A stretch of 64,000 bases of DNA from Schizochytrium sp. TIO01. Its lineage: Eukaryota > Protista > Bigyra: Labyrinthulomycetes. The notes under the pieces were generated by a model. That model was not told where the DNA came from and did not search any database. It saw nothing but the letters and a program-made list of their open reading frames with translations. The translations under genes and the position numbers were made by a program. Location: positions 3,690,483-3,754,482 of the forward strand of contig SMSO01000032.1 of the NCBI GenBank assembly GCA_004764695.1, written 5' to 3'. This document shows, piece by piece, positions 16,061 through 31,524 of the stretch (its first letter is position 1; every line of letters begins with the position of its first letter).

Positions 16061-16075
16061 CACTTGCCACTAAAG

Positions 16076-18481
16076 ATGAGTGAGGAACAAGAGGAAGTTG
16101 AGAGTGTCGAAAATGGCATCGTGAGCGTCATCGTGCTCATTGGCCTCGGCCTCGTTGTAGCAGGACTCGTGGAGGCTCTCCCACCCAAGATCTTGGAGAG
16201 GTTCCCACAATCCGTCCTGGTGCTCATCCTTGGTCTTGTTGCAGGCCTGCTCGGTATTCACTTCAGTAATGTCACAGGTAACACACGCATGGCAGAACTC
16301 ATCTCTGGATTAGAGATTGACCCAGAAGGCATCCAGCTTATCTTTCTCCCCCCACTTATCTTCAGTGAGCTCTTCAAAATGAACGTCCACGTGTTTCTTA
16401 ACGTTAGCTGGCAAGCAATCCTGCTTGCCTTCCCAGGTGTCTTGATCTCCATGTGTCTCACTGCGCTTTTCCCTATATACATTCTCCCCAACGAGTGGGG
16501 CTGGTATGAAGCCCTCGCCTTTGGTGGCATGTTGGCCGCTACTGATCCCGTAGCAGTACTTGCTATTCTTCACTCACTCAATGCATCCAAGCACTTATCG
16601 ACAATTATTGCAGGTGAAAGTGTTCTCAACGATGGTTCAGCCATCGTGGTTGTCACTCTCTTTCTCAATCTTCAGGCTGGCCAGGTATATTATGCCGGAG
16701 ATGTCATCGCTTTTTCTTTTCGCGAAACCCTCGGATCTGTCGCACTTGGTACAGCCTGTGGATTGGCAATGATGGCAATCTTCCCGCTCCTCAAAAACAA
16801 CCCAACCCCTCTTGTTGCACTCACCTTTGGTGTACCATACCTTTGTTTTGCTGCTGCCCTGGCAATCGACATGAGTGGTGTGCTCTCCCTCGTGCCATTG
16901 GGTCTCATCTGTAACGCATGGGGACGTGCTACCATTGTCGGCGCTGTGGCTGATCGCATGGAACATTTCTGGGACCAAGCTGAATTTTTTGCCAACTCTG
17001 TTCTCTTCGGTATCGCTGGTCTTTATATTGCAGATGATCTCCTCGAAGGTTTAATTAAGGGCTACGATTGGGGCTTTCTGTTCTTGCTCTATGTTCTCCT
17101 CATGGTGATTCGTGGCATCGCAGTAACCATGCTCTATCCGGCAATGTACAAGCTTGGATATGGCTTCAACGTGAAAGAAGCTATTGTTACAACATGGGGT
17201 GGTCTTCGTGGTGCTGTTGGTCTTACTCTTTCTTTTGCAATTCGTGGCACTCAGAATGTATCTGACCAGGTGGGTCAACAAGCAACATTTTACATGGGTG
17301 GTATTGTGATTCTCACTCTTATGGTAAATGCCACCACAAGTGGACCCCTTATCCAGTACTTCAACCTTCAGCGCTCAGGTGATAAGCGTATCCTTGCAGA
17401 GCTGGAGAATGATTTCAAGGGTGTTGCTGAAAAGTCTCTTCTCTTTGCTGGTGCAACTGATGAGCAAATTGAGTCTGTAACTGGATCTAGCCATTCAAGC
17501 GAACCTGCGCACCATGCAGAACAGTCCGATAACAAAGTTGAGGAAACTTTGGCTGCGAAGAGGAGACATTTTCTCTTGGCTCAAGCAGTTACCTTTGATC
17601 ACCTCCTCAGTCGTGGTGTCATTCCACGGGGTGCTTGGTTTCTTGCTATGCAATCTATTGATGTTGAGCTTGATAAACGTGATTCAGAGATTGCTCAGTG
17701 GCGTACTGTCGTTAAGCAGCCTCTTCTCAAGCTCTTCGTTAAGTCGATCAGCGATGAAACGCTCAAAAAGTTTCTCAGCGCCAAGAATGTCAAGGACGAA
17801 GAATTTCTCGAGAAGGAAAGCCATGACCACCCAGACCCTCCTACTGAACTCGGCCGCCATGCCAGATATTCCCTCACCTTGATTTCATACATTGCATTTG
17901 CCTACCTTCGCGCTCATGAAGATGCACGTGCAGCTCTGGACGCAATGGCTAGCGAGGCAGATTTGCTTGGACAACAACGCGCGGCTCTGCATAGGGAATC
18001 CTTGCAGGATTGCCGTGCCCCTGCCAAATTTCTATCTCTGGTTCGTGCTCGGCACCCTGATATTTTGCAGAGCATCAAAGCCGTGCAACTCTCAACAGCA
18101 ATTCGCTGGGATCTTCTCGATCGTGCTGCTCGTCTTGCTGACCTTGGTCTTCTTGAGCACAGTGAGCTGCACCCACTCGTGGAGCTCGCCGATCATATTT
18201 CACAAAAATGTTCCGCGCTGAACCTCGCGCTAAAAGCTGACAAGACCACTAACGCTTCAGGGGACTTCTCGAAGAACCCTGATTTCTATCCGTTTCCCGC
18301 TCTTGCATCCCCTATCAAATCACGCGGGAGCATCGCAGATATTGAGCTCAGCCTTACCGACGTCTCCGAACCTGATCGCATCACAGCAACAACCTCAGCT
18401 CGTGGAGGAACAGATATTCGCGGATTGGAGTCACGGATTCTTGATGAAGTGCGCAACCAGAGTCACTGGTATGGCTCCTAA
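16076..18481 (+). CDS. Na+/H+ antiporter, CPA1 family, SOS1/NHX7-like
   Basis: About 12-13 hydrophobic segments; motifs FLPPLIF, LAATDPVAV, IIAGESVLNDG, WGGLRGAVGL and TLMVNATT; helical cytosolic C-terminal region. First ATG at 16076. Confidence 0.93.
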   Translation: MSEEQEEVESVENGIVSVIVLIGLGLVVAGLVEALPPKILERFPQSVLVLILGLVAGLLGIHFSNVTGNTRMAELISGLEIDPEGIQLIFLPPLIFSELFKMNVHVFLNVSWQAILLAFPGVLISMCLTALFPIYILPNEWGWYEALAFGGMLAATDPVAVLAILHSLNASKHLSTIIAGESVLNDGSAIVVVTLFLNLQAGQVYYAGDVIAFSFRETLGSVALGTACGLAMMAIFPLLKNNPTPLVALTFGVPYLCFAAALAIDMSGVLSLVPLGLICNAWGRATIVGAVADRMEHFWDQAEFFANSVLFGIAGLYIADDLLEGLIKGYDWGFLFLLYVLLMVIRGIAVTMLYPAMYKLGYGFNVKEAIVTTWGGLRGAVGLTLSFAIRGTQNVSDQVGQQATFYMGGIVILTLMVNATTSGPLIQYFNLQRSGDKRILAELENDFKGVAEKSLLFAGATDEQIESVTGSSHSSEPAHHAEQSDNKVEETLAAKRRHFLLAQAVTFDHLLSRGVIPRGAWFLAMQSIDVELDKRDSEIAQWRTVVKQPLLKLFVKSISDETLKKFLSAKNVKDEEFLEKESHDHPDPPTELGRHARYSLTLISYIAFAYLRAHEDARAALDAMASEADLLGQQRAALHRESLQDCRAPAKFLSLVRARHPDILQSIKAVQLSTAIRWDLLDRAARLADLGLLEHSELHPLVELADHISQKCSALNLALKADKTTNASGDFSKNPDFYPFPALASPIKSRGSIADIELSLTDVSEPDRITATTSARGGTDIRGLESRILDEVRNQSHWYGS

Positions 18482-19988: not shown

Positions 19989-22490
19989 TTTATCCTCCTA
20001 TTATAACTTCCCTGGGTTTACCACCTTGTAGTCGTTCCACTAATACACTGCTTCCGCGATAATGTTTCTTTGAGGTTCTGCTTTCTAGGCAAGGTCAACA
20101 AGAAAATCCCTCAAACAGCAACCCGCAGGGCGAGAGTTAGCAGCTTGCAAACTACGAATGGGGTTCCTCCTTCGTAATTTCCAAGCCTCCAGGCTCGATA
20201 GGTTTCTTTTCTGAGTCCAGGATACTCACGTCGAGTGCCCTAGTAGCCGAGAAGGCAAAGATTGCAGAATTGCGACAAACAATCTCGGACACCCAAGGAC
20301 CTGCGTATAGAATCTTCGCTGAAGAGCAAATAAAGGGCTTCCGGGCTTCCCGGTTGTTTATCTCAATCTCTCCTCCACACTGCTGACCTCCCCCGCCTCC
20401 ACTTCAAAGTCTGAGATCTACAGCCCCAACTTCGTCGTCGTCATCTAAAAAGAAGGAAAATAACTACCATTATAATATCTGCGCCTCCCTTATGACGGTT
20501 AGGTTATAGAGTCCGCACTGCTGTCCCCGCGCACACCCTACGTCCTAAATTTAATTCCTGTCCTAAATTCAAAATGGGTTCTTCGTCTTTAATTTTCATC
20601 ACAGTACTAAGGAGAACTGAAAGTCACGACACATGCGTGCATCCTACTATATCAGCATAACGTAGGTTGAGTGATTCAATTCACAGTTTCGAGTGCTTGT
20701 GGAGATTTGTCAAGCTCGGTTTATTTAAACATAATGTGCAAATGGATGAACTTCATGCGATTTATACAGCCTTGGATTGCTGAAGTCACCCGGGCGATGG
20801 TGTAATGTCACCACCAGGTTTGCGGAAGGGTTTGGCTGGTGTGGATAAGAGGAAGGGCAGGCTTACAGCTTACAGCTGTGCAGGTTGGCCGTAAACCTCG
20901 GGACCAGATCATAAGCTGCGTTATCTGGCGCTGGCCCGTGAAGTGTAAGTAAATGCAAGCGTTGTACACATGGTACCTCACGTAAGCAATGCTGCAGTCT
21001 AATATTTCTTGAAGGTGGAAGTGCAAGTGAGTCCAAGTATGTTGTTTACAATGGTTCCCTTTTTGCAAAATGAGTGTGGCCCCCTACGAGTAGAACCAGT
21101 TACAACATCACTCATTCCTAATACTGCAACGTGTATGCAAGTAACGAAAGTGTGACGGAGCAGTATGCCTTGAAACACATTGTGAAAATCATATGCAGAA
21201 AATGAGGCTTCTAATATTGCAGATTCTCCACAAAGACAGCTCGCTAATCGATATAAAGAAGTGAGGGAGTTTTTACTTTTGCAGCTTCCTCCAGCGGTTT
21301 AGCTGAGATAAACTTTTGGAGGGACTGATCCAGCATTGTTGATAACGGTGTTGTGGTTACTGGATTATTTTTGGAGCAAGCTAGCTAGTGAGAACCTCCA
21401 ACTCAATCCAATTTTTTAGAGTGTCGCAAAAAAACCTTTACTCCAAATGCTAGGTTTAGTAGGTAGCTAGCTACCTCATGCTGACAAAGGTCTATCTTCC
21501 ATCTGAGCAAAAAAGCTAGCGCTTAGAACGACCTTAAATTAGTATGGAGGGTAGATGAGACGTTCTAGAACAGTGTTCTGTTCTAAACCAACCAAACATG
21601 TAATTTCTCACCTTGATAATTTGGAATCCTATTCCCTAGGTAGTTTATTTAGACATACCAGGTTCACTATTGATTTCTATCTCACTTTACTTCACATAAT
21701 TGAAGATTTGCTATGTAGAATTCACAAACAAGATAGTAGCACTTCCTAAAATGTGGTTTTTCTAGGCTCTGCGGTTGATATTGAATTAAGAAATCCACGA
21801 AATAAGCCTATAAATATAGGCGTCCCAACTTTTCTTCTATATAGTTCATTCACAGCTAGTCTTTTCCAAATTATTCACAAAAATGATGCACACGAGCCTC
21901 AGTCCATGTCATTTTAGTGGTTGCTAAATATGATTTATATATATATCTATTGAACATAATAGCAGCTGATCACATCATGATGGTAAACTTTCAAGTGCAC
22001 TTTATTCGAGGATTTTCTAAAAGGAAGGGTTATTAATGTCAAGAGCAATAATGCATACACACATTATACTGCTTAGTGTTACCAAAAAAGAGATAGAAGA
22101 GCCTATCAGTAGGTAGTGTAACACATTTGAGACCTGAGAATGGCTTTCTTCTCTCTTAGAACAGTCCTTTTATCCTTTTACTGAGTAATAACTCAAGCTG
22201 AAGTATAGGAGGGCTTTGCAAGAACTAGCTCTGATGAGTCTCTCAAAAACAGGGATGTACTAGGAATGAGAAGCTTTGTCTTCTTGGTGAGATGGGCGCA
22301 TTGCGTTTCTTTGAAGCCAAACCAAGAGAACCTATTTGACTTGAGTATTTTCTCCAAGATTTCAACAAATAACCTTTGACTGGTGAGAGTAGCTTAATTT
22401 GAATATTTTCTCAAAAATGAAAACAACAAAAAAACCAAAATAAAAAACGGACTTCCTAGTGTGCAACCATAGTAGTCCATAGCACCTTTA

Positions 22491-22530
22491 CATAATCCAA
22501 TTAGTAATGACATAATCCAATTAGTAATGA
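22491..22530. repeat. Perfect 20-bp tandem duplication (cataatccaattagtaatga)x2
   Basis: Read directly from the sequence. Confidence 0.9.
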
Positions 22531-23083
22531 CAATCAGTCATGGCTGACAAACTGAATAGATTATCGATTTACGATACTATGATTGCTTGGAGATGATTGA
22601 AGATTGTCGGAGATTGTTGCGTTTAGTTGTTGTTAAAGCTAGTGTTGGTACTTATCTTGGCTAGACATGCTCTAGTTGAATCGATTTTATCGATTCGGGT
22701 TGATTTAAATCTGTTGTTTGATAGCTTTGATAGCTTTCTCTTTTGGAGACTTGCTTCGTTCCCATCATTCCCGTATGGGTCACTCCCAAACGAAGTTCTG
22801 TTTAGGTGGAGTACCATACAAATGGATTGGCCAATGGATTGTCATGTGCAAGTCAGCAAGGCGTCCCTCTAAGGCTCGCAAGTTCAATACGTTGTGTTGA
22901 TCCATTTCCCTTCTTGGTTAGGCAGTCAGCAGTTAGTAGGCAACAGGCTGTGCAGGCTGACCAAGGTCATGCCAAGTTGAAACCATACTTTTATTGCTCA
23001 TAGACCATCCTGGCATCAGCCTTACAGATATCATAGAAGGCCGTGCTGGGACGCGCAGCCAGCGACGAACGCTGCAAGAGTAT

Positions 23084-26000
23084 ATGAGTGCACTGCGAGA
23101 AACCCAAGAGCCTGAGATGGCCACAATTCCAAGAGAAAAGGTCACCATCGATTATCCAGAACATATCCTCGGTGAAGGCAGCTTTGGACAAGTCCTATCA
23201 GGTGTGCTGCAAGGGGAAGATGGTGAGAATATATCAGTTGCTATTAAGAGAGTTCGTCAAAAACGTGATCAACTTCAATTTGCTGAGCAAAATGCATTGA
23301 TTGAAGAGGCCCAAAGTTGGCATGGGTTAAATCACAAAAACATCGTCTGCCTGCTTGGGACATGCATCATTCAGAACCGGTTTCATTTGGTCATGGACAA
23401 GTGCGACTTATCTCTAGATAAGTTACTGTATGAAACTAAACCGAGTGGCACATGCACTATCCTTGGACTAGATGATAAAGAGGCCATTTTGCTCGGTGTC
23501 ATACGAGGGCTCTGCTATCTCCATAGTCAAAATGTAATTCATCGTGATCTGAAACCTGCCAATGTGCTCCTCAGTCAAGACCTGGGCCTGATAAAGCTCG
23601 CAGACTTTCGTCTTGCAGTCAGGACAAGCCCGAATGCAACTTTGGCAGAGACTATTTCTGTGGCTGGAACCCCTGTGTACATGGCTCCAGAAGTACTTCA
23701 AGCTCCTGCTCGTTGGACAACAAAGGCAGACATATATTCTCTAGGCGTGATCATGTGGGAGATATACCACGAGGAGACGCCATACGGGCGTTCCTTGCAT
23801 CATTTAGAAGCGCTTAAAAACAGGGTTCTCGCAGGCGAGCGTCCTGTAATATCTGATCAAGTACCTGTCAAACTCTGGATAGTCCGCACCATGGAATCTT
23901 GTTGGGACGAGGACCCTGCAAACAGACCAGCTGCTGAGGAGGCTCTAACGAGGTTGCAGTCTTCAGGTGCTGAACGCCGATCGAGCCTCCTCATTCGTGG
24001 ACTTGTGACTGCATTTATACAGAGAAACCACCGCACACCTGCAAAACAAAATGTGAATGTCGAAACGGTGCGGAGTCTAGTTCGAGACCTGTCTGATCGA
24101 GGCGAGAGGAGTGATCTGTTACGAACACTACAAATCTTGCACAATGCTTTGGAAGCTGAATTCAAAACTGCTGAGACCGCAGATGGTCATGATGACCTGA
24201 GGAGAGCTGTTCGTGAACGGGATATTCTTGTTCATTTGCAGAGAATCGTAAAGGAAGAGGAACACGATGCCGACGTGGTTTCTGAAGCACTTTGGATCTT
24301 TCATTTCGCCTTTCATCGTGAAGCTACCTGTGAGTATACTAAGGCTGCAATGAAGACCTATGGTCTAGGTCCTGTACTAATTAGTATTATGCAAGAGCAA
24401 GCGAGCGAATCAGAAGTGCAGGCTGCAGCATGTGCTTGTGTCAGAACCCTCGCGTACAGAAACACAGAAAGCGCGATTACTCTAGCAATAGATTTAAATG
24501 TGGGCGCAAAGATTGTGGCCGCCACACGCGCGCATCGAACGAATGCAGACGTGCAAAAAGAAGCATGTGCGGCATTGCAAGATCTTGCTTCAAATGATCG
24601 CAACAGAGACATCCTGGGACAAGATTTGAATGTGGGCGCAGAGATTGTGGCCGCCATGAGCACACATCGAACCAATGCAATCGTGCAAGAAAAAGCATGT
24701 GGAGCATTGATGAAACTTGCTCTCAACACTCGCAACAAAGAGATCCTGGGACATGATTTGAATGTGGGCGCAGAGATTGTGGCCGCCATGAGCGCACATC
24801 GAATGAATGCAGGCGTGCAAGAAAAAGCATGTGGGGCATTGAGGAGGCTTGCTCTCAACACTCGCAACCAAGAGATCCTGGGACATGATTTGAATGTGGG
24901 CGCAGAGATTGTGGCCGCCATGAGCACACATCGAATGAATGCAGGCGTGCAAGAAAAATCATGTGGGGCATTGAGGAATCTTTCTGTGAACACTCGCAAC
25001 AAAGAGATCCTTGGCCAAGATTTGAATGTGGGCGCAGAGATTGTGGCCGCCATGAGCGCACATGGAGCAAATGCAGGCGTGCAAGAAAAAGCATGTGGGG
25101 TACTCAGGAATCTTGCTTTAAATGATCGCAACGCAGAGATCCTTGGCCAAGATTTGAATGTGGGCGCAGAGATTGTGGCCGCCATGAGCGCACATGGAGC
25201 AAATGCAGGCGTGCAAGAAAAAGCATGTGGGGCATTAAGGAATCTTGCTTCAAATGATCGCAACGCAGAGATCCTTGGCCAAGATTTGAATGTGGGCGCA
25301 GAGATTGTGGCCGCCATGAGCACACATCGAACGAATGTTGACGTGCAAGAGCAAGCATGTGGGGCATTGAGGAATCTTGCTTCAAATGATCGCAACGCAG
25401 AGATCCTTGGCCAAGATTTGAATGTGGGCGCAGAGATTGTGGCCGCCATGAGCACACATCGAACGAATGTTGACGTGCAAGAGCAAGCATGTGGGGCATT
25501 GAGGAATCTTGCTTCAAATGATCGCAACGCAGAGATCCTTGGCCAAGATTTGAATGTGGGCGCAGAGATTGTGGCCGCCATGAGCGCACATGGAGCAAAT
25601 GCAGGCGTGCAAGAAAAAGCATGTGGGGCATTGAGGAGGCTTGCTCTCAACACTCGCAACGCAGAGATCCTGGGCCAAGATTTGAATGTGGGCACAGAGA
25701 TTGTGGCTGCCATGAGCGCACATCGAACGAATGCAGACGTGCAAGAACAAGCATGTGCGGCATTGACGAATCTTTCTGTCAACAATCGCAACGCAGAGAT
25801 CCTGGGCCAAGATTTGAATGTTGGCCCAGAGATTGTGGCCGCCATGAGCACACATCGAACGAATGCAGGCGTGCAAGAACAAGCATGTTGGGCATTGTCG
25901 GATCTTACCTACAATAATGATCGCAACGCAGAGATCCTTGGCCAAGATTTGAGTGTGGGCGCAGAGATTGTGGCTGCCATGAGCGCACATCGAACGAATG

Positions 26001-28060
26001 CAGGCGTGCAAGAACAAGCATGTGGGGCATTGACGAATCTTTCTGTCAACACTCGCAACAAAGAGATCCTTGGCCAAGATTTGAGTGTTGGCGCAGAGAT
26101 TGTGGCTGCCATGAGCGCACATCGAACGAATGCAGACGTGCAAGAAAACGCATGTGGGGCATTGTGGAATCTTGCTTCAAATGATCGCAACGCAGAGATC
26201 CTGGGCCAAGATTTGAATGTGGGCGCAGAGATTGTGGCCGCCATGAGCGCACATGGAGCAAATGCAGGCGTGCAAGAAAAAGCATGTGGGGCACTCAGGA
26301 ATCTTGCTTTAAATGATCGCAACGCAGAGATCCTGGGCCAAGATTTGAATGTGGGCGCAGAGATTGTGGCCGCCATGAGCACACATCGAACGAATGTTGA
26401 CGTGCAAGAGCAAGCATGTCGGGCATTGTGGAATCTTTCTGTCAACACTCGCAACGCAGAGATCCTTGGCCAAGATTTGAATGTGGCCGCAGAGGTTGTG
26501 GCCGCCATGAGCACACATCGAACGAATGTAGGCGTGCAAGAACAAGCATGTGGGGCATTGTTTAATCTTGCTTCCAATGATCGCAACAAAGAGATCCTGG
26601 GCCAAGATTTGAATGTGGGCGCAGAAATTGTGGCCGCCATGAGCACGCATCGAACGAATGCAGACGTGCAAGAAAGAGCATGTTGGGTATTGTGGAATCT
26701 TGCTCTCAACAATCGCAACAAAGAGATCCTGGGCCAAGATTTGAATGCGGGCCCAGAGATTGTGGCCGCCATGTGCGCGCATCCAACGAATGCAGACGTG
26801 CAAGTAAACGCATGTGGGGCATTGCGGAATCTTGCTTTAAATGATCGCAACTGTAAGGTCTTGGGCCAAGATTTGAATGTGGGCGCAAAGATTGTGGCCA
26901 CCATGCGCGCGCATCTAGCGAGTGCAGACGTGCAAAAACAAGCATGTAGTGCACTAAGTAAGCTGACTTCAAATGATCGCAACTGTGAAATCTTTGGACA
27001 AGATTTGCATGTGGGCCCAGAGATTGTGGCCGCCATGTGTGCGCATCTAACGAATGCAGACGTGCAAAAAGAAGCATGTGGGGTATTGTGCAATCTTACT
27101 GTCAATAACAATCGCAACAAAGAGATCCTGGGCCAAGATTTGAATGTGGGCGCAGAGATTGTGGCGGCCATGCGTGCACACCTAACGAATGCAGACGTGC
27201 AAGAGCAAGCATGTGCGGCATTGTGGAGTCTTTCTTTCAACAATTTCAACTATGAGATATTGGGACAAGACTTGAATGTGGGCGTAGAGATTGTGGCCGC
27301 CATGCGCGCACATCGAACTAATGCAGGCGTGCAAGAGCAAGCATGTGCGGCATTGTGGAGTCTTTCTCTTGATAACAATCGCAACTGTGAGATCTTGGGA
27401 CAGGGTTTGAATGTGGGCACAGAGATTGCGGCGGCCATGTGTGCGCATCTAACGAATGCAGACGTGCAAAAAAGAGCATGTGTCGCATTGTGGAGTCTTG
27501 CTCGCAACAATCGCAACTGTGAGATCTTGGGACAAGGTTTAAATGTGGGCGCAGATATTGCGGCGGCCATGCGCACGCATCTAACGAATGCAGATGTGCA
27601 AAATCAAGCATGTAGGGTACTAAGTAAGCTTGCTTCAAATGATCGTAACTGTGAGATCTTGGGACAAGATTTGCATGTGGGCCCAGAGATTGTGGCCGCC
27701 ATGTGCGCGCATTTAACGAATGCAGATGTGCAAGAAAATGCATGTAGGGCATTAAGTAAGCTTGCTTCAAATGATCGCAACTGTGAGATCCTGGGACAAG
27801 ATTTGAATGTGAGTGCAGAGATTGTGGCGGCCATGCGGGCGCATCTAACGAATGCAGACGTGCAAAAGGAAGCATGTGGGGCATTGTGGGGTCTTGCTCG
27901 CAATAATCGCAACAAAGAGCTTATGGGACAAGATTTGAATGTGGGCGCAGAGATTATGGTGGCCATGCGCGCGCATCTAACGAATGCAAGCGTGCAAATA
28001 CAAGGATCTGGGGCATTGTGGAGTCTTACTTCAAATGATCGCAACTGTGAGATTATGTGA
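23084..28060 (+). CDS. TKL-type protein kinase fused to a long armadillo (ARM) repeat array; possibly a decaying allele
   Basis: Frame open from 22961, first ATG at 23084. Kinase motifs LGEGSFGQV, VAIK, HRDLKPANVLL, DFR (for DFG), GTPVYMAPE, DIYSLG and CWDEDPANRP. These are followed by degenerate ARM units and 27 conserved 44-aa units (DLNVGAEIVAAMxxHxxNAxVQExACxALxxLAxNxRNxEILGQ). Confidence 0.9.
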   Translation: MSALRETQEPEMATIPREKVTIDYPEHILGEGSFGQVLSGVLQGEDGENISVAIKRVRQKRDQLQFAEQNALIEEAQSWHGLNHKNIVCLLGTCIIQNRFHLVMDKCDLSLDKLLYETKPSGTCTILGLDDKEAILLGVIRGLCYLHSQNVIHRDLKPANVLLSQDLGLIKLADFRLAVRTSPNATLAETISVAGTPVYMAPEVLQAPARWTTKADIYSLGVIMWEIYHEETPYGRSLHHLEALKNRVLAGERPVISDQVPVKLWIVRTMESCWDEDPANRPAAEEALTRLQSSGAERRSSLLIRGLVTAFIQRNHRTPAKQNVNVETVRSLVRDLSDRGERSDLLRTLQILHNALEAEFKTAETADGHDDLRRAVRERDILVHLQRIVKEEEHDADVVSEALWIFHFAFHREATCEYTKAAMKTYGLGPVLISIMQEQASESEVQAAACACVRTLAYRNTESAITLAIDLNVGAKIVAATRAHRTNADVQKEACAALQDLASNDRNRDILGQDLNVGAEIVAAMSTHRTNAIVQEKACGALMKLALNTRNKEILGHDLNVGAEIVAAMSAHRMNAGVQEKACGALRRLALNTRNQEILGHDLNVGAEIVAAMSTHRMNAGVQEKSCGALRNLSVNTRNKEILGQDLNVGAEIVAAMSAHGANAGVQEKACGVLRNLALNDRNAEILGQDLNVGAEIVAAMSAHGANAGVQEKACGALRNLASNDRNAEILGQDLNVGAEIVAAMSTHRTNVDVQEQACGALRNLASNDRNAEILGQDLNVGAEIVAAMSTHRTNVDVQEQACGALRNLASNDRNAEILGQDLNVGAEIVAAMSAHGANAGVQEKACGALRRLALNTRNAEILGQDLNVGTEIVAAMSAHRTNADVQEQACAALTNLSVNNRNAEILGQDLNVGPEIVAAMSTHRTNAGVQEQACWALSDLTYNNDRNAEILGQDLSVGAEIVAAMSAHRTNAGVQEQACGALTNLSVNTRNKEILGQDLSVGAEIVAAMSAHRTNADVQENACGALWNLASNDRNAEILGQDLNVGAEIVAAMSAHGANAGVQEKACGALRNLALNDRNAEILGQDLNVGAEIVAAMSTHRTNVDVQEQACRALWNLSVNTRNAEILGQDLNVAAEVVAAMSTHRTNVGVQEQACGALFNLASNDRNKEILGQDLNVGAEIVAAMSTHRTNADVQERACWVLWNLALNNRNKEILGQDLNAGPEIVAAMCAHPTNADVQVNACGALRNLALNDRNCKVLGQDLNVGAKIVATMRAHLASADVQKQACSALSKLTSNDRNCEIFGQDLHVGPEIVAAMCAHLTNADVQKEACGVLCNLTVNNNRNKEILGQDLNVGAEIVAAMRAHLTNADVQEQACAALWSLSFNNFNYEILGQDLNVGVEIVAAMRAHRTNAGVQEQACAALWSLSLDNNRNCEILGQGLNVGTEIAAAMCAHLTNADVQKRACVALWSLARNNRNCEILGQGLNVGADIAAAMRTHLTNADVQNQACRVLSKLASNDRNCEILGQDLHVGPEIVAAMCAHLTNADVQENACRALSKLASNDRNCEILGQDLNVSAEIVAAMRAHLTNADVQKEACGALWGLARNNRNKELMGQDLNVGAEIMVAMRAHLTNASVQIQGSGALWSLTSNDRNCEIM

Positions 28061-28195
28061 TAAGATTTGAATGTGGGCGCAGAGATTGTGGCTGTCGTGC
28101 GTGCGCATCTAACGAGTGCACATGTGCAAGAAACTGCATGTGATACATTGCGTAATCTAGCTTGCAATCGTGAAGCCTTCCAGTTTCTTATCGAT
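24491..28195 (+). repeat. Coding tandem array of 28 ARM units of 132 bp (units 11, 20 and 22 are 135 bp)
   Basis: Unit 1 starts at 24491 and unit 28 at 28064; 3573 bp = 27x132 + 3x3. Units 7 and 8 (25283..25546) are identical in DNA. Confidence 0.95.
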
Positions 28196-28282
28196 GCGGG
28201 TGCACGTGACGCTGTCTTGAACGCATATCGAAGATTTCCATCATCAAGAACTTGTCAGCGAGCTTTTGCAAAGCTACTTTAA
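28064..28282 (+). pseudogene. In-frame orphaned C-terminus of the kinase-ARM gene (28th repeat plus capping helix) beyond a double stop
   Basis: ATG TGA TAA GAT TTG AAT GTG replaces the usual xTG GGA CAA GAT TTG AAT GTG. The same frame continues for 72 codons: DLNVGAEIVAVVRAH...TCQRAFAKLL*. Confidence 0.85.
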
Positions 28283-29541
28283 GTGATAACAGATAAATGA
28301 AGTACGTTTGTATTTTTAGCTGTTTTTAGCTACCACCTTAGGGACAGCAAAACCAGGAGAAATGAATTGAAACAAGAAATGCCGTAGAGAGGTATTTTCG
28401 CTCGCTTTTCTGACTAATTAGCTGCCTATGAAATCTTGTCATCTATACCCAGTTGAACTTGCAAATTGAGATGGTCACGGTCAAGAAGGCAAGCTCCTTT
28501 GGGTAGAACACCTGTAAATGATCAAGAAACCAAATTAATCATAATTTACCTGCGAAAATTTAAAGGGATATATATTAGTTTTGAGATTCTGACACAATTG
28601 CGGGCTTGTTCGAACACTTATTGAAAACGCTGTATCAATCAACAATTGGTTTGATATAAGTTTCGACTTTTAATTTTCAGTATTTGTTTCCGCTACGTCT
28701 ATGGTCAAATTCAGAACTAAAATATGGTTTGGATAGTCCCATTCGTTGCATGATACTGTGACTGTGCTTTGGATGGAGAATAACCTTCACTATTGAGCGA
28801 AATGAGAACAGAACGTTTATGTCGAGTCCTTTCGTAGCAAAAGAAAAGAACATATTAAATGCGCATCAGAACAACAAAGGAAACACGTTAGACTGAAGGT
28901 GGTGAAGAACAAAACATGTAAGGAGTTAATACTTGGTAGGAGAGCTATTGTGTAATCAGAATGGAGCATCTACTCTAGCGGCGTTAGTGTTCCTTCGCAG
29001 TGAACCTAGTTCGTCTGTAGTATATACGTGTCTGGTCTATAGCTAGAACAGAACAGCTAAGGTAAACCCTTAAGAGTGATCGCAATCTCCTAACTGATAT
29101 ACTCTTATGGTAACTGCTAAGGGTGATTAGGTGATGAAAAGGGCATAAAGAAATAAATTGTTTTCAAGGCAAAGTAAAATAAAAAGAAAGCAAGACTCAG
29201 AACCTTTCCGCTGCACGCGTGAACTCGCCCTGCGTGGAAGAGAACCCGCGGGATCGCGGGACAGGAAAGCCTCAGGACGAGGCTAGTCGTAGCACTGGAC
29301 TTCAGATCAGGTTGCGAAGCCCAATTCTTTCTGACACGAGCGAGGCCCGAAAAGGAGCGCCGACGTGGCAGCAAACAGTTCACGAGTAGGACTGCTCTTG
29401 TGGGCTTCATTTTTAAGTAAATAACTCATATACGGGGAATAAAACCCAAGCGACGACGAAACGCGTTGCTTGTTTCGTGAGTGTTCGCAACATAAAGGCG
29501 ATTTCGGAGATCGTGCAGTGGAGAGAAAGTTAAAGGTTACC

Positions 29542-31524
29542 ATGAGCTGGTCTTTCAAGAGCTTTGCGGACGTGAAGAGCTTCGCAGAATCGTCGACAAA
29601 GCTCAAGGTGCCGACCTTTGATGAGCTACGCAACACCGTATCCTCGAGTGTGCAGGCCGTAAATTCCAGTGTCCAAGAGGCGTACAAAGAAGTCAATGCA
29701 AATGTTTCTGCTGGTATGAATAGCAGCGGCAGTACAGGGCTCATGGGCAAGGTTCGCCAGGCGTTTGAACTCGACAGCTTGCATGCCGCTGTGCACCAGA
29801 GTAGTATGGATGAGGCAGACGAAATGCATTTTCCTGAGCTCGACCTAACATATATCACTGATCGTGTTATCATCATGGGGTTTCCTGCAGGCCCAAGACA
29901 TGGAAACTCTGCGAAAACTATCGCAGAGTTTTTGAACAAGCGTCATGGAAATGATTATATGGTGTGGAACATCAGTGAACGCAAGTATGACACAAGCTTT
30001 TACAAGGGCCAAGTCATGGAGTTCTCGTTTCCAGGCTACCCTGCACCACCCATCGGGATGCTCTTCAAACTTGTTATGGGTATGGAGTCTTGGCTGAAAT
30101 CAGACGATAAGAATGTCGTAGTAATCCATTGCATTACAGGCCGTGGACGCAGTGCTACTGTTGCAGCATGCCTTTTAGAATGGGTGGGGCGTGCCGCTTC
30201 ATCACGCGACGCTCTCAGTTTTGTTTGCAAGCGCCGTAAGACAACGCTGTCTCAGGCTGTTGTTCCTTCGCAATTTCGCTACATTGATATGTTCCATGAA
30301 ATTATGGACGGGATTCGGCCTCGCTACGAGCCACTTAACATGAAACGGTTCCGCGTAATTGGAATCCCGGATTTTATGTCCGCGGCAGACAAAGCCCGCT
30401 CTGACTTACCCTCAAATGGAGGTTGCAAGCCGTACCTTCAAGTATACAAGAATGGAAAATTGTTATTTACCACTGAGTGGGAGGATTCTCAAAAGGAAGG
30501 CGGTACCAAGGTCTACAACTATAAGGAGGACACTGAAATTGCAATGGATGTTGACTGTTTTGTCGACGGTGACATCCTGCTGCGACTGCGCCATATCGAC
30601 ACCACCACAGGCAGACATATCTCCATGTTTCGTTATGGATTTCACACCGGCTATGTACCGATGGGTGTTCTCGGAATTCCAAAGGAGGAATTAGATGGTG
30701 CTAGTGTCGACCCTCGCTTTGCCAAGGACTTTTCTATCGAAATTGAATTCGAGCCAACGCAAGACAAAACCGGTAAACAGACTACTGCTGATGCTATGTT
30801 TGATGCCACCATTTCCTCTAAAGCGTCCTTCTGGGATGAAATCGCACGAAAGAAGAAGCTAGCGAGAGAACGCACCCCATCAGAGCTGGACCGTTTGCTA
30901 GATGCCCCTCCCAAAAAACATGAACCTACTGATGCGTCTGATCCGACTAAAAAGCAAGCAGGATCACAGGGTGCAGCAGTAGGCGCTGGGGCTACATCGG
31001 CAGCTGCTGCTTCTAGCACCGCAGATGGCGAAACAAAAGCTCCTCGCCCAGAACCGGTTGTTGAGTTTAGTCTCCTTGATGACGAAGATGATGACTTTGA
31101 AGAGAACCCTCGCAAAAATCGTCTCGTTTCTAGTGATTCAACGTCAGCTCTCTTTAGCAGTCTTGTGGATCCGGTAGATGCCCCTTCTAATTCACATACA
31201 GTTACAGAGCAAGTAAGAGGGAACTCCTCTCCTTCACCTGAAGTACGCAGTAATGATTCCGTGACTGATGACAAAGAGGTTAAGCATGAGGCACGTGAGC
31301 TTCGCAAGGAAGACGAAGATTCTTCGGCAAAATCAAAAATGGCTGAAGATAAAGATGAAGATGTTGATGATCTAGCCGCGCTGGAACGCGATCTTGGCAT
31401 TGACGAGAGTGAAATGGACGATGAAAACGTATCACCAAAGAAATCTGCTTCCAAGTCAGCAGAAGGAGGGAATGATGACGACCCAGAGCTGGCCGAACTT
31501 GAGCAGTATCTGGAAGGTCTTTAA
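29542..31524 (+). CDS. PTEN/tensin-type phosphatase + C2 domain protein with an acidic disordered tail
   Basis: ELDLTYITDRVIIMGFP, YMVWNISERKYD, P-loop HCITGRGRS (CX5R), VPSQFRYI; PTEN-C2 motifs GCKPYLQVY, VDGDILL and MFRYGFHTGYV. First ATG at 29542. Confidence 0.92.
   Translation: MSWSFKSFADVKSFAESSTKLKVPTFDELRNTVSSSVQAVNSSVQEAYKEVNANVSAGMNSSGSTGLMGKVRQAFELDSLHAAVHQSSMDEADEMHFPELDLTYITDRVIIMGFPAGPRHGNSAKTIAEFLNKRHGNDYMVWNISERKYDTSFYKGQVMEFSFPGYPAPPIGMLFKLVMGMESWLKSDDKNVVVIHCITGRGRSATVAACLLEWVGRAASSRDALSFVCKRRKTTLSQAVVPSQFRYIDMFHEIMDGIRPRYEPLNMKRFRVIGIPDFMSAADKARSDLPSNGGCKPYLQVYKNGKLLFTTEWEDSQKEGGTKVYNYKEDTEIAMDVDCFVDGDILLRLRHIDTTTGRHISMFRYGFHTGYVPMGVLGIPKEELDGASVDPRFAKDFSIEIEFEPTQDKTGKQTTADAMFDATISSKASFWDEIARKKKLARERTPSELDRLLDAPPKKHEPTDASDPTKKQAGSQGAAVGAGATSAAAASSTADGETKAPRPEPVVEFSLLDDEDDDFEENPRKNRLVSSDSTSALFSSLVDPVDAPSNSHTVTEQVRGNSSPSPEVRSNDSVTDDKEVKHEARELRKEDEDSSAKSKMAEDKDEDVDDLAALERDLGIDESEMDDENVSPKKSASKSAEGGNDDDPELAELEQYLEGL

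What the first reader, a model, noticed from the sequence alone, without database searches (positions are those of the whole stretch)
24491..28195. Kinase-ARM protein with a frozen scaffold and hypervariable binding face: candidate diversifying recognition/immune receptor
Seen: across 28 units of 44 aa the framework (GAT TTG AAT GTG GGC GCA GAG ATT GTG GCC GCC ATG...) is nearly invariant even at silent sites. Radical substitutions cluster at unit positions 23 (E/K/V/N/I), 24 (E/K/Q/N/R/T), 27 (G/A/W/R/S/V/D), 30 (R/Q/M/T/S/W/F/C), 31 (N/D/K/R/S/G) and 34 (S/L/V/Y/F/R/C). This i, i+3/4, i+7, i+10/11 spacing maps to one face of a helix. Established: that is ARM helix H3, whose WxxxN ladder (positions 27 and 31 here) binds peptides in importin-alpha. 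Fungal NLRs such as HET-E have high-identity WD40/TPR/ANK repeats with positively selected surface sites. Inference: a kinase effector wired to a reprogrammable ARM sensor, i.e. an NLR-like non-self recognition system without a nucleotide-binding domain. I do not know of one described in this kind of protist.
Basis: partly seen in the sequence, partly recalled or inferred. Interest (0 to 1): 0.85.

Follow-up and report, generated by a model that had tools for sequence, protein, structure and literature searches.

The report
Truncated kinase with variable armadillo array
A marine protist (thraustochytrid) gene joins a RIPK-like kinase to 27 armadillo repeats whose binding-groove residues vary faster than silent sites; this copy has lost both ends that its relatives keep, and its suspected role as a recognition receptor is untested.

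Summary
One ORF (22994-28060, first ATG 23084) encodes a protein kinase, a helical linker and 27 tandem 44-aa armadillo (ARM) units. A 28th unit lies behind an in-frame TGA-TAA.

"Frozen even at silent sites" is overstated. Silent diversity between units is 0.23 per site.

Site models and tree-free simulations support nonsynonymous excess at unit positions 24, 30, 34 and 39. Support is weaker at 16, 20 and 27. Positions 23 and 31 are no faster than neutral.

The units fold as a canonical ARM solenoid. Position 27 is the importin/LRRK2 Trp position.

This copy is a derivative. Full-length relatives exist in about 20 loci here and in Hondaea fermentalgiana. Compared with them it lacks the roughly 160-aa N-terminal domain and the C-terminal cap, and it has DFR instead of DFG. 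Its sister copy 480 kb away is a pseudogene. Groove residues of units 19-27 barely differ between the two copies, so diversification is old or episodic. The proximal 18 units are copy-specific and recombining.

It is not an NLR. An immune role is inference only.

The scan has already reported this family on other DNA of this genome. No paper describing it was found.

The parts
22512..22972 (.). Upstream non-coding DNA with no homology to the family's N-terminal domain. It is duplicated together with the gene in sister copy B.
   Evidence: 96% identical to L037 2917-3380. tblastn of paralogue N-termini finds nothing upstream of 22973. There is no long + strand ORF in 20031-22994.
22973..23083 (+). 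Remnant of the family's pre-kinase segment. It is in frame with the ORF but lies upstream of the first ATG.
   Evidence: Homology to full-length paralogues starts at their residue ~160, which is window 22973. A 1-nt difference from copy B closes the frame further upstream.
23084..28063 (+). Coding sequence of 1658 codons from the first ATG, ending in a tandem stop TGA TAA (28058-28063).
   Evidence: ORF 22994-28060, sequence. Contigs identical to 23102-23389, 23755-24413 and several array pieces occur in two runs that look like RNA, and those runs lack the upstream 22500-22700.
23162..23950 (+). Protein kinase domain of TKL type, closest to RIPK1. VAIK, HRDLKPAN and APE are present. DFG is replaced by DFR (codon 23609-23611).
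   Evidence: Pfam Pkinase at residues 57-319 of the ORF. RIPK1 2e-28 is the best PDB match. G176R is the only exception among 10 aligned family members.
23951..24490 (+). Helical linker. Its last ~100 residues form about two degenerate ARM repeats that continue into the array.
   Evidence: AlphaFold2 model: helices 321-335, 342-365, then triplets 371-410 and 416-457, with pLDDT 73-97. dN/dS 0.53 against copy B.
24491..26869 (+). Proximal block, ARM units 1-18. It is copy-specific and contains young duplicates (u7=u8, u5~u14~u6) and mosaic units.
   Evidence: Nearest-unit identities up to 100%. No positional counterpart in copy B. 88 of 231 site pairs fail the four-gamete test, Rm>=7.
26870..28057 (+). 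Distal block, ARM units 19-27. These units are older and more diverged, and they keep the same order as in sister copy B.
   Evidence: Units 19, 20 and 22-27 are 93-99% identical to B's units in the same order. Only 3 of 22 amino-acid differences fall on hypervariable positions.
28064..28282 (+). Untranslated relic of unit 28 plus the family's C-terminal cap (72 codons still open, ending at the family's usual stop).
   Evidence: The translation '...NREAFQFLIDAGARDAVLNAYRRFPSSRTCQRAFAKLL*' matches the caps of paralogues ('...LGARECVSDAHQRFPSS..C..AF..L*'). Pfam ARM_LRRK2 0.0025.

Best explanation
The gene is a derived member of a thraustochytrid-restricted, expanded family that evolves by gene birth and death.

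Canonical family protein: an N-terminal ~160-200-aa helical domain, a RIPK-like TKL kinase, a helical linker, an array of LRRK2-type ARM repeats, and a C-terminal cap.

This copy keeps the kinase (with DFG changed to DFR), the linker and 27 ARM units. It has lost the N-terminal domain through a 5' truncation shared with two sister loci. It has lost the cap through a tandem stop shared with at least one sister locus.

The array is a canonical ARM superhelix. The groove-lining face of H3 (positions 20, 23, 24, 27, 30, 31, 34), together with H1 position 39, carries nearly all the amino-acid variation. Positions 24, 30, 34 and 39 change faster than silent sites.

New unit combinations arise by unit duplication and intra-array recombination in the proximal block. 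The distal block is stable.

Most likely mechanism (inferred, not shown): the groove binds extended peptides or protein surfaces, and each unit contributes a pocket of different specificity. Binding is coupled to the kinase or pseudokinase module. This truncated copy would then act as a sensor, adaptor or decoy lacking the family's N-terminal output domain, rather than as a complete receptor.
For: Anatomy.

Family and canonical ends:
- More than 20 loci in the 64-Mb genome.
- Full-length paralogues and Hondaea or metagenome homologues all carry the N-domain and the cap.
- Outside this genome only four proteins exceed 44% identity over kinase plus linker, two of them from Hondaea fermentalgiana. 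The neighbouring housekeeping gene is 69% identical to Hondaea.

Fold: AlphaFold2 pLDDT 90.5, pTM 0.89 for units 9-16. Foldseek TM 0.75-0.82 to designed ARM proteins, Vac8, importin-alpha and LRRK2. In designed ARM proteins the pockets are built from H3 residues 29, 30 and 33 of adjacent repeats (PMC11228518), which correspond to positions 23, 24 and 27 here.

Selection:
- M0 omega is 1.0, but M1a vs M2a LRT is 53.9, with 14% of sites at omega 4.3.
- The signal persists in units 2-17 (LRT 18.7), in units 18-27 (13.2), and with a tree from codons 23-44 only (20.3).
- Neutral simulations calibrated on silent diversity give P<=5e-4 for sites 34 and 39, P 0.001-0.01 for site 30, and top-4 P 0.01-0.02 even with free recombination.
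- The same positions are the most variable in six other arrays of the family.

Still in use:
- The 1688-codon frame is intact, while the sister copy, ~5% diverged, has 2 frameshifts and extra stops.
- Identical contigs occur in transcriptome-sized runs that lack the upstream spacer.

Domain association: related ARM arrays in other protists carry N-terminal TIR or caspase domains.
Against: - Whole-array omega is ~1, which is also what decay would give.
- Both ends are truncated, DFG is changed to DFR, and there are 6 private changes at otherwise invariant family positions.
- The closest relative is a pseudogene.
- Groove residues of units 19-27 are almost unchanged between the two copies. The selection signal may therefore be inherited from ancestral arrays rather than acting on this gene now.
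- Recombination among units is known to inflate site-model LRTs. Under the most conservative null, the top-8 statistic is not significant (P 0.07-0.10).
- The runs read as RNA are only guessed to be RNA.
- No ligand, no phenotype and no between-strain polymorphism data exist.
Confidence: 0.55

Rival explanations
1. The gene is a young pseudogene. It would be a 5'- and 3'-truncated duplicate drifting neutrally, and the hypervariable-face pattern would be a fossil of selection on ancestral functional arrays.
For: M0 omega is 1.0. The N-domain and cap are lost. DFG is changed to DFR, with 6 private changes at invariant positions. Sister copy B is clearly dead and shares the truncation and the TGATAA. 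Groove residues are static between the copies.
Against: No stop or frameshift occurs in 1688 codons. At ~2.5% divergence per lineage, roughly 5 stops would be expected under neutrality (my estimate), and copy B shows such damage. Linker dN/dS is 0.53. Contigs from probable RNA runs cover the gene. The young proximal units still show omega above 1 (LRT 18.7). The 'IM-stop' ending is shared with a much more diverged ARM-only paralogue, so it may be a regular alternative terminus.
Confidence: 0.25
2. There is no diversifying selection. Exposed groove residues would simply be unconstrained (omega about 1), while concerted evolution homogenises the rest. The array would be a generic scaffold or adaptor.
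For: Positions 23, 31, 13, 14, 17 and 33 sit at omega about 1. Silent diversity inside the hypervariable codons is also raised (pS 0.39). Recombination can create false positives. The conservative top-8 test gives P 0.07-0.10.
Against: Sites 34 and 39 exceed every or nearly every neutral simulation. The LRT survives partition-specific trees and both subsets. Seven or eight different amino acids occur at positions 30 and 34 among 28 units. The same sites top the entropy ranking in independent arrays.
Confidence: 0.15
3. The array is an assembly artefact: a collapsed or mis-joined tandem repeat, with the double stop being a sequencing error.
For: Long near-identical repeats are hard to assemble. 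Short-read contigs of public runs break inside the array.
Against: The genome is in 37 contigs, and the window lies in a 9-Mb contig. Copy B carries the same TGATAA and the same unit order in the distal block. Public DNA runs from other studies give identical contigs across the 5' boundary and the flanks, and report no difference at 28058-28063.
Confidence: 0.03

Closest known systems
Fungal NLRs with highly internally conserved WD40/ANK/TPR repeats (HET-E/HET-D type; PMC4986451, PMC12222747)
   Same: Both have a tandem array of near-identical repeats with a conserved framework. A few surface positions are hypervariable with omega above 1. Units are shuffled by intra-array recombination. Both belong to large gene families that evolve by birth and death.
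   Different: This gene has no NACHT or NB-ARC NTPase. The repeat type is ARM. The attached module is a RIPK-like kinase. Allelic polymorphism and an incompatibility or immune phenotype are not shown here.
Designed and natural peptide-binding ARM proteins (dArmRP, importin-alpha, Vac8)
   Same: The fold is the same (TM 0.75-0.82). The variable positions 23, 24, 27, 30, 31 and 34 correspond to the H3 pocket residues. Position 27 is the Trp and position 31 the Asn of the binding ladder.
   Different: Trp is present in only 2 of 28 units and Asn in 15 of 28, so a uniform basic-peptide (NLS-like) ladder is not conserved. The unit has 44 aa rather than 42. No ligand is known.
LRRK2 / ROCO kinases
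   Same: The best sequence match of the unit in the PDB is the LRRK2 ARM domain (Pfam ARM_LRRK2 2.4e-74). Both pair this ARM type with a TKL kinase related to the RIPKs.
   Different: There are no ANK, LRR, Roc-COR or WD40 domains. The domain order is reversed (kinase before ARM). The array is long and near-identical rather than made of degenerate repeats.
Kinase or pseudokinase proteins with C-terminal ARM/HEAT regions (ULK4, Fused/STK36, MAP3K-epsilon/Cdc15)
   Same: An N-terminal kinase-fold domain is followed by a C-terminal ARM solenoid.
   Different: Those proteins are single-copy, conserved and carry degenerate repeats. They belong to different kinase groups and have no hypervariable face.
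Full-length paralogues of the same family in this genome and in Hondaea fermentalgiana (earlier scan notes call the N-domain MLKL-like)
   Same: Kinase, linker, ARM unit type and cap sequence are 46-77% identical over kinase plus linker.
   Different: This copy lacks the N-terminal domain and does not translate the cap. The MLKL-likeness of the N-domain was not tested here, and Pfam finds nothing in it.

Membership tests
Protein kinase superfamily (active Ser/Thr kinase) | Kinase fold with a Gly-rich loop, VAIK Lys, alpha-C Glu, HRD Asp, catalytic Asn, DFG and APE | tested here: inconclusive
   Pfam Pkinase 3.9e-45. GEGSFG, VAIK, HRDLKPAN and APE are present, but DFG is DFR, unique among 10 family members. 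The AlphaFold2 kinase model has low confidence.
RIPK family | Kinase domain closest to the RIPKs, plus RHIM, death or CARD modules | tested here: not met
   RIPK1 is the best PDB match (2e-28, against ~1e-24 for others). Pfam finds no RHIM, DD or CARD. The kinase is RIPK-like only by similarity.
Armadillo repeat family | Units of ~42 aa with three helices forming a right-handed superhelix | tested here: met
   Pfam Arm 1.5e-55 and ARM_LRRK2 2.4e-74. The model has H2 at 4-14, H3 at 19-32 and H1 at 36-45 in each unit, with pLDDT 90.5. Foldseek matches dArmRP, importin-alpha and Vac8.
NLR / STAND receptors | Central NACHT or NB-ARC P-loop NTPase between the effector and the repeats | tested here: not met
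   Pfam finds no NTPase domain in the 1688-aa ORF or in full-length homologues P0001 and P0004.
Highly internally conserved, positively selected repeat arrays (fungal NLR type) | High repeat-to-repeat identity | tested here: met
   27.8 copies with 85% matches. Proximal units are 87-100% identical. The overall mean is 82.6%.
Highly internally conserved, positively selected repeat arrays (fungal NLR type) | Omega above 1 at a few surface positions | tested here: met
   M1a vs M2a LRT 53.9, and 20.3 with a partition tree. The sites are 24, 30, 34 and 39. The caveat is recombination.
Highly internally conserved, positively selected repeat arrays (fungal NLR type) | Allelic polymorphism in unit number or content between strains | not testable with these tools
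   Only short Logan contigs were available, and they break inside the array. Paralogous copies do differ in unit number and order.
Thraustochytrid N-domain-kinase-ARM family (canonical architecture) | N-terminal ~160-200-aa helical domain before the kinase | tested here: not met
   Homology starts at paralogue residue ~160. Nothing related lies upstream.
Thraustochytrid N-domain-kinase-ARM family (canonical architecture) | Translated C-terminal cap '...GAR..V...H.RFPS...C..A...L' | tested here: not met
   The cap sequence is present at 28064-28279 but lies behind TGA TAA.
LRRK2 / ROCO | Roc GTPase-COR tandem | tested here: not met
   There is no Roc or COR match in Pfam.

The most novel reading that the evidence does not exclude
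The family may be an NLR-independent innate recognition system of labyrinthulomycete protists. An output domain and a RIPK-like kinase would be wired directly to an ARM array whose pockets are diversified by unit duplication and recombination. N-domain-less copies such as this one would serve as decoys, regulators or a reservoir of units for gene conversion. The TIR-ARM and caspase-ARM proteins of other protists would be parallel versions of the same design.
Probability: 0.2. Interest if true: 0.85.

Novelty: new variant of a known kind. Interest (0 to 1): 0.55.

Why it matters
Repeat arrays that keep a rigid scaffold while diversifying a binding face are the hallmark of germline-encoded recognition receptors: LRRs in plants and animals, VLRs in lampreys, WD40/ANK/TPR in fungal NLRs. 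An ARM-based version joined to a necroptosis-type kinase, found in a stramenopile protist, would widen the known range of eukaryotic immune or allorecognition architectures. It would also give a natural counterpart to engineered modular ARM peptide binders.

For this particular locus the value is more modest. It documents how such arrays turn over: a stable distal block, a recombining proximal block, truncated derivatives and pseudogene sisters. It also provides testable sites (24, 30, 34, 39).

Tried and rejected
- Single-tree site models alone were not trusted, because units recombine. I added subset and partition trees and tree-free neutral simulations on the inferred tree and on Kingman trees with free recombination.
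- Mapping variable sites on coordinates was not possible, because the structure tool returns no coordinates. The mapping rests on secondary structure, helical periodicity and alignment to the LRRK2/importin Trp position.
- The kinase-plus-linker fold gave an unusable kinase model (pLDDT below 50) from a 10-row alignment. Only the linker and ARM part is used.
- Read laying returned only fragmented Logan contigs. They show presence and probable transcription, but not array polymorphism, transcript ends or expression level. The variant contig at 27840-28157 matches copy B, not an allele.
- An intron that would skip the TGATAA was rejected. There are no plausible splice sites, and the same letters stand in copy B.
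- The long antisense ORFs across the array (for example 24358-25851, minus strand, 497 aa) were rejected as genes. They are by-products of a repeat without stops in other frames.
- Literature searches for thraustochytrid or Labyrinthulomycetes with MLKL, armadillo or kinase found nothing.
- The position list of the dArmRP library could not be retrieved beyond residues 29, 30 and 33.
- The MLKL-like claim for the paralogues' N-domain, from earlier scan notes, was not tested. Pfam finds no family there.
Full report
**1. What is there**

The window is 64 kb of a 9-Mb contig in a 64-Mb, 37-contig genome. Between 24490 and 28163, Tandem Repeats Finder reports one array: period 132, 27.8 copies, 85% matches, score 4372.

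The array lies inside a single open frame, 22994-28060 on the + strand, 1688 codons. The first ATG is at 23084.

Pfam finds a protein kinase domain at ORF residues 57-319 (3.9e-45). The rest is armadillo repeats: Arm 1.5e-55 and ARM_LRRK2 2.4e-74.

Splitting the protein gives 27 units of 44 aa, three of which have 45. Then come TGA TAA at 28058-28063. After that, still in frame, comes a 28th unit that runs into a 72-codon tail.

The long ORFs on the opposite strand across the array are frame artefacts of the repeat.

**2. Check of the observation**

It also confirms that the first twelve codons are almost invariant, including third positions.

Two corrections are needed.
- Positions 13, 16, 20, 36 and 39 are equally variable.
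- Silent sites are not generally frozen. Mean pairwise nucleotide identity is 82.6% (72-100%). Pairwise silent diversity is 0.23 overall and 0.20 in framework codons, against nonsynonymous diversity of 0.07 there.

The framework is therefore under ordinary purifying selection (omega about 0.3), with some homogenisation on top. It is not freshly copied throughout.

**3. Fold and position of the variable sites**

Units 9-16 were folded with a small alignment of family arrays. The model has pLDDT 90.5 and pTM 0.89. Each unit has three helices: H2 at positions 4-14, H3 at 19-32, and H1 at 36-45.

Foldseek places the model with designed ARM proteins, Vac8, importin-alpha, APC and the LRRK2 ARM domain, at TM 0.75-0.82.

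By sequence, the nearest solved relative of the unit is LRRK2. Unit 11 'HRTNAGVQEQACWAL' aligns to LRRK2 'HRKNKHVQEAACWAL'. This fixes position 27 as the canonical Trp and position 31 as the canonical Asn of H3.

In designed ARM proteins, peptide pockets are built from H3 residues 29, 30 and 33 of neighbouring repeats, and binding perturbs mainly H3 (PMC11228518, PMC10684580). With Trp33 equal to position 27 here, these are positions 23, 24 and 27.

Positions 20, 23/24, 27, 30/31 and 34 follow an i, i+3/4, i+7 spacing. They lie opposite the invariant V21, A25, A28/L29 and L32 core stripe.

Position 39 lies in the first turn of H1. I could not measure its exposure because model coordinates are not returned.

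**4. Selection**

A codon tree of the units gives M0 omega 1.0. My own implementation reproduces IQ-TREE's likelihood of -1448.79.

M1a is much better than M0, and M2a is better again, with an LRT of 53.9. In M2a, 14% of sites have omega 4.3.
- Posterior above 0.99: positions 24, 30, 34 and 39.
- Posterior 0.55-0.74: positions 16, 20 and 27.
- Neutral class: positions 23 and 31.

The units recombine. 88 of 231 informative site pairs in units 2-17 fail the four-gamete test, and Rm is at least 7. First and second halves of units occur in different combinations. I therefore repeated the test in several ways:
- units 2-17 alone, LRT 18.7;
- units 18-27 alone, LRT 13.2;
- separate trees for the two halves of the unit. 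Codons 1-22 give LRT 3.3, not significant. Codons 23-44 give LRT 20.3, with the same four sites.

Tree-free checks used neutral codon simulations calibrated to the observed silent diversity.
- On the inferred tree, sites 34 and 39 exceed all 3000 simulations and site 30 has P=0.0013. The mean of the four highest sites exceeds all simulations.
- With Kingman genealogies, sites 39, 34 and 30 have P = 0.00025, 0.0005 and 0.011. The top-4 mean has P 0.01-0.02. The top-8 mean has P 0.07-0.10.

I conclude that a handful of sites (24, 30, 34, 39) evolve faster than silent sites. The rest of the 'hypervariable' set is compatible with relaxed constraint.

The same positions (20, 24, 27, 30, 31, 34, 39) top the entropy ranking in six other arrays of the family.

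**5. The family, and what this copy lacks**

Searching the genome with ten units or with the kinase-linker part finds more than 20 loci, many of them in tandem clusters. Open frames reach 3031 aa.

Full-length paralogues begin with a further ~160-200-aa domain ('MPS.PPSF.SSLQLAREGATLLEH...'). They end with a cap '...LGARECVSDAHQRFPSS..C..AF..L*'.

The only close relatives elsewhere are two Hondaea fermentalgiana proteins and two unnamed contigs, at 44-51% identity. They have the same ends. The neighbouring Na+/H+ exchanger gene is 69% identical to Hondaea's, and the next hit is 45%. The organism is therefore a thraustochytrid other than Hondaea.

In the gene studied here, homology to the family starts only at paralogue residue ~160 (window 22973). 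Nothing related lies upstream. The cap is present but sits behind the tandem stop.

The kinase keeps GEGSFG, VAIK, HRDLKPAN and APE. However, it has DFR where all nine aligned relatives have DFG. It carries six private changes at otherwise invariant positions, against 0-3 in most close paralogues.

RIPK1 is the best solved match of the kinase, at 2e-28.

**6. A sister copy dates the events**

A second locus lies 480 kb away on the same contig (L037). It shares the following with this gene:
- the upstream spacer (96% identity);
- the 5' truncation;
- the linker (95.6% identity, dN/dS 0.53);
- the distal units in the same order;
- the 3' flank (94% identity);
- the same 'CEIM**' stop.

It has also lost the kinase precisely. 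It carries two frameshifts and further stops, so it is a pseudogene.

Units 19, 20 and 22-27 are 93-99% identical between the two copies. Only 3 of 22 amino-acid differences fall on hypervariable positions. The unit-to-unit diversity of the distal block therefore predates the duplication and has not changed quickly since.

Units 1-18 have no positional counterpart in the sister copy. They include identical or near-identical pairs. This is where the array has been growing and recombining.

At about 2.5% divergence per lineage, I estimate that some five stop codons would be expected in a 5-kb frame drifting neutrally. There are none. Together with the state of the sister copy, this argues that the frame is kept open by selection.

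An 'IM-stop' at the same unit position also ends a much more diverged ARM-only paralogue. This terminus may therefore be a recurring variant rather than fresh damage.

**7. Expression and independent sequence**

Twelve studies hold the kinase stretch.

Laying four runs showed contigs identical to the 5' boundary and flanks in two DNA runs. In two runs with transcriptome-sized assemblies (35 Mb against 65 Mb for the DNA runs), identical contigs cover the kinase, the linker and parts of the array, but there is no cover of 22500-22700.

This fits transcription. The run type is a guess, however, and contigs cannot give transcript ends or expression levels. No difference was reported at the stop codons.

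**8. Interpretation**

The gene is not an NLR, because it has no NTPase. It is not a ROCO protein either.

Kinase-ARM fusions as such are known (ULK4, LRRK2, Cdc15/MAP3K-epsilon types; and hits). What is unusual is the long array of near-identical ARM units with a diversified groove, set in an expanded, fast-turnover family.

Related ARM arrays in other protists carry N-terminal TIR or caspase domains. This is circumstantial support for the use of this repeat type as the sensing part of death- or defence-type proteins.

For this locus, the best-supported reading is a transcribed, frame-intact but doubly truncated family member. It is a ligand-binding ARM solenoid attached to a possibly crippled kinase, and it lacks the family's N-terminal output domain.

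Receptor, decoy and early pseudogene cannot be separated without expression, polymorphism and functional data.

**9. Relation to earlier notes of this scan**

Several windows of the same genome were already reported as members of this family. Their N-domain was read as MLKL-like, and the organism as a thraustochytrid.

I confirmed that an N-terminal domain exists in paralogues and that it is absent here. I confirmed the thraustochytrid placement and the mosaic nature of the units. I did not test the MLKL likeness.

No published description of the family was found.

Noticed in passing
L037 2917-6504 (G000:C31:4195916-4199503): Pseudogene sister copy. It has the same upstream spacer and 5' truncation, a precise kinase deletion (junction PREEV|NVET), two frameshifts, and the same TGATAA before the last unit. 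The u19-u20 unit pair is duplicated.
   Followed up: yes
G000:C30:5209124-5216089 (L036/L049): A 2322-aa open frame starts with the same truncated 5' end and has the same kinase-deletion junction as the sister copy. About 45 ARM units follow, ending in a frameshifted unit. An ARM-only derivative has therefore been kept open for 7 kb.
   Followed up: partly
G000:C30:230426-232300 (L032): An ARM-only paralogue (625 aa) ends '...HECFIM*' at the same unit position (42/43) as the window gene's '...NCEIM**'. This suggests a recurring or shared alternative terminus.
   Followed up: partly
P0259, P0311, P0273 (TIR_2 + ARM); P0320, P0257, P0333 (Peptidase_C14 + ARM): In other protists (for example Pseudoscourfieldia marina) and in metagenomes, ARM arrays 33-38% identical to this one carry N-terminal TIR or caspase domains. 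These are effector-plus-ARM proteins without a NOD module.
   Followed up: partly
window 28058-28063: Two adjacent nonsense codons (TGA TAA) replace GGA CAA of the unit consensus. No other stop occurs in 1688 upstream or 72 downstream codons. Two independent hits side by side are unexpected for random decay.
   Followed up: partly
window 22490-22532: A perfect 20-bp tandem repeat (2.2 copies) lies in the upstream spacer, just before the stretch shared with the sister copy.
   Followed up: no
window 29470-31524 (+): The downstream 684-aa ORF carries an HCxxGxxR signature ('VIHCITGRGRS') and an acidic, low-complexity tail. It looks like a PTEN/tensin-type phosphatase. This was not checked with tools.
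   Followed up: no
window 16064-18481 (+): A Na+/H+ exchanger gene (Pfam PF00999) is 69% identical to Hondaea fermentalgiana 'Sodium/hydrogen exchanger 7'. It was used only to place the organism.
   Followed up: yes
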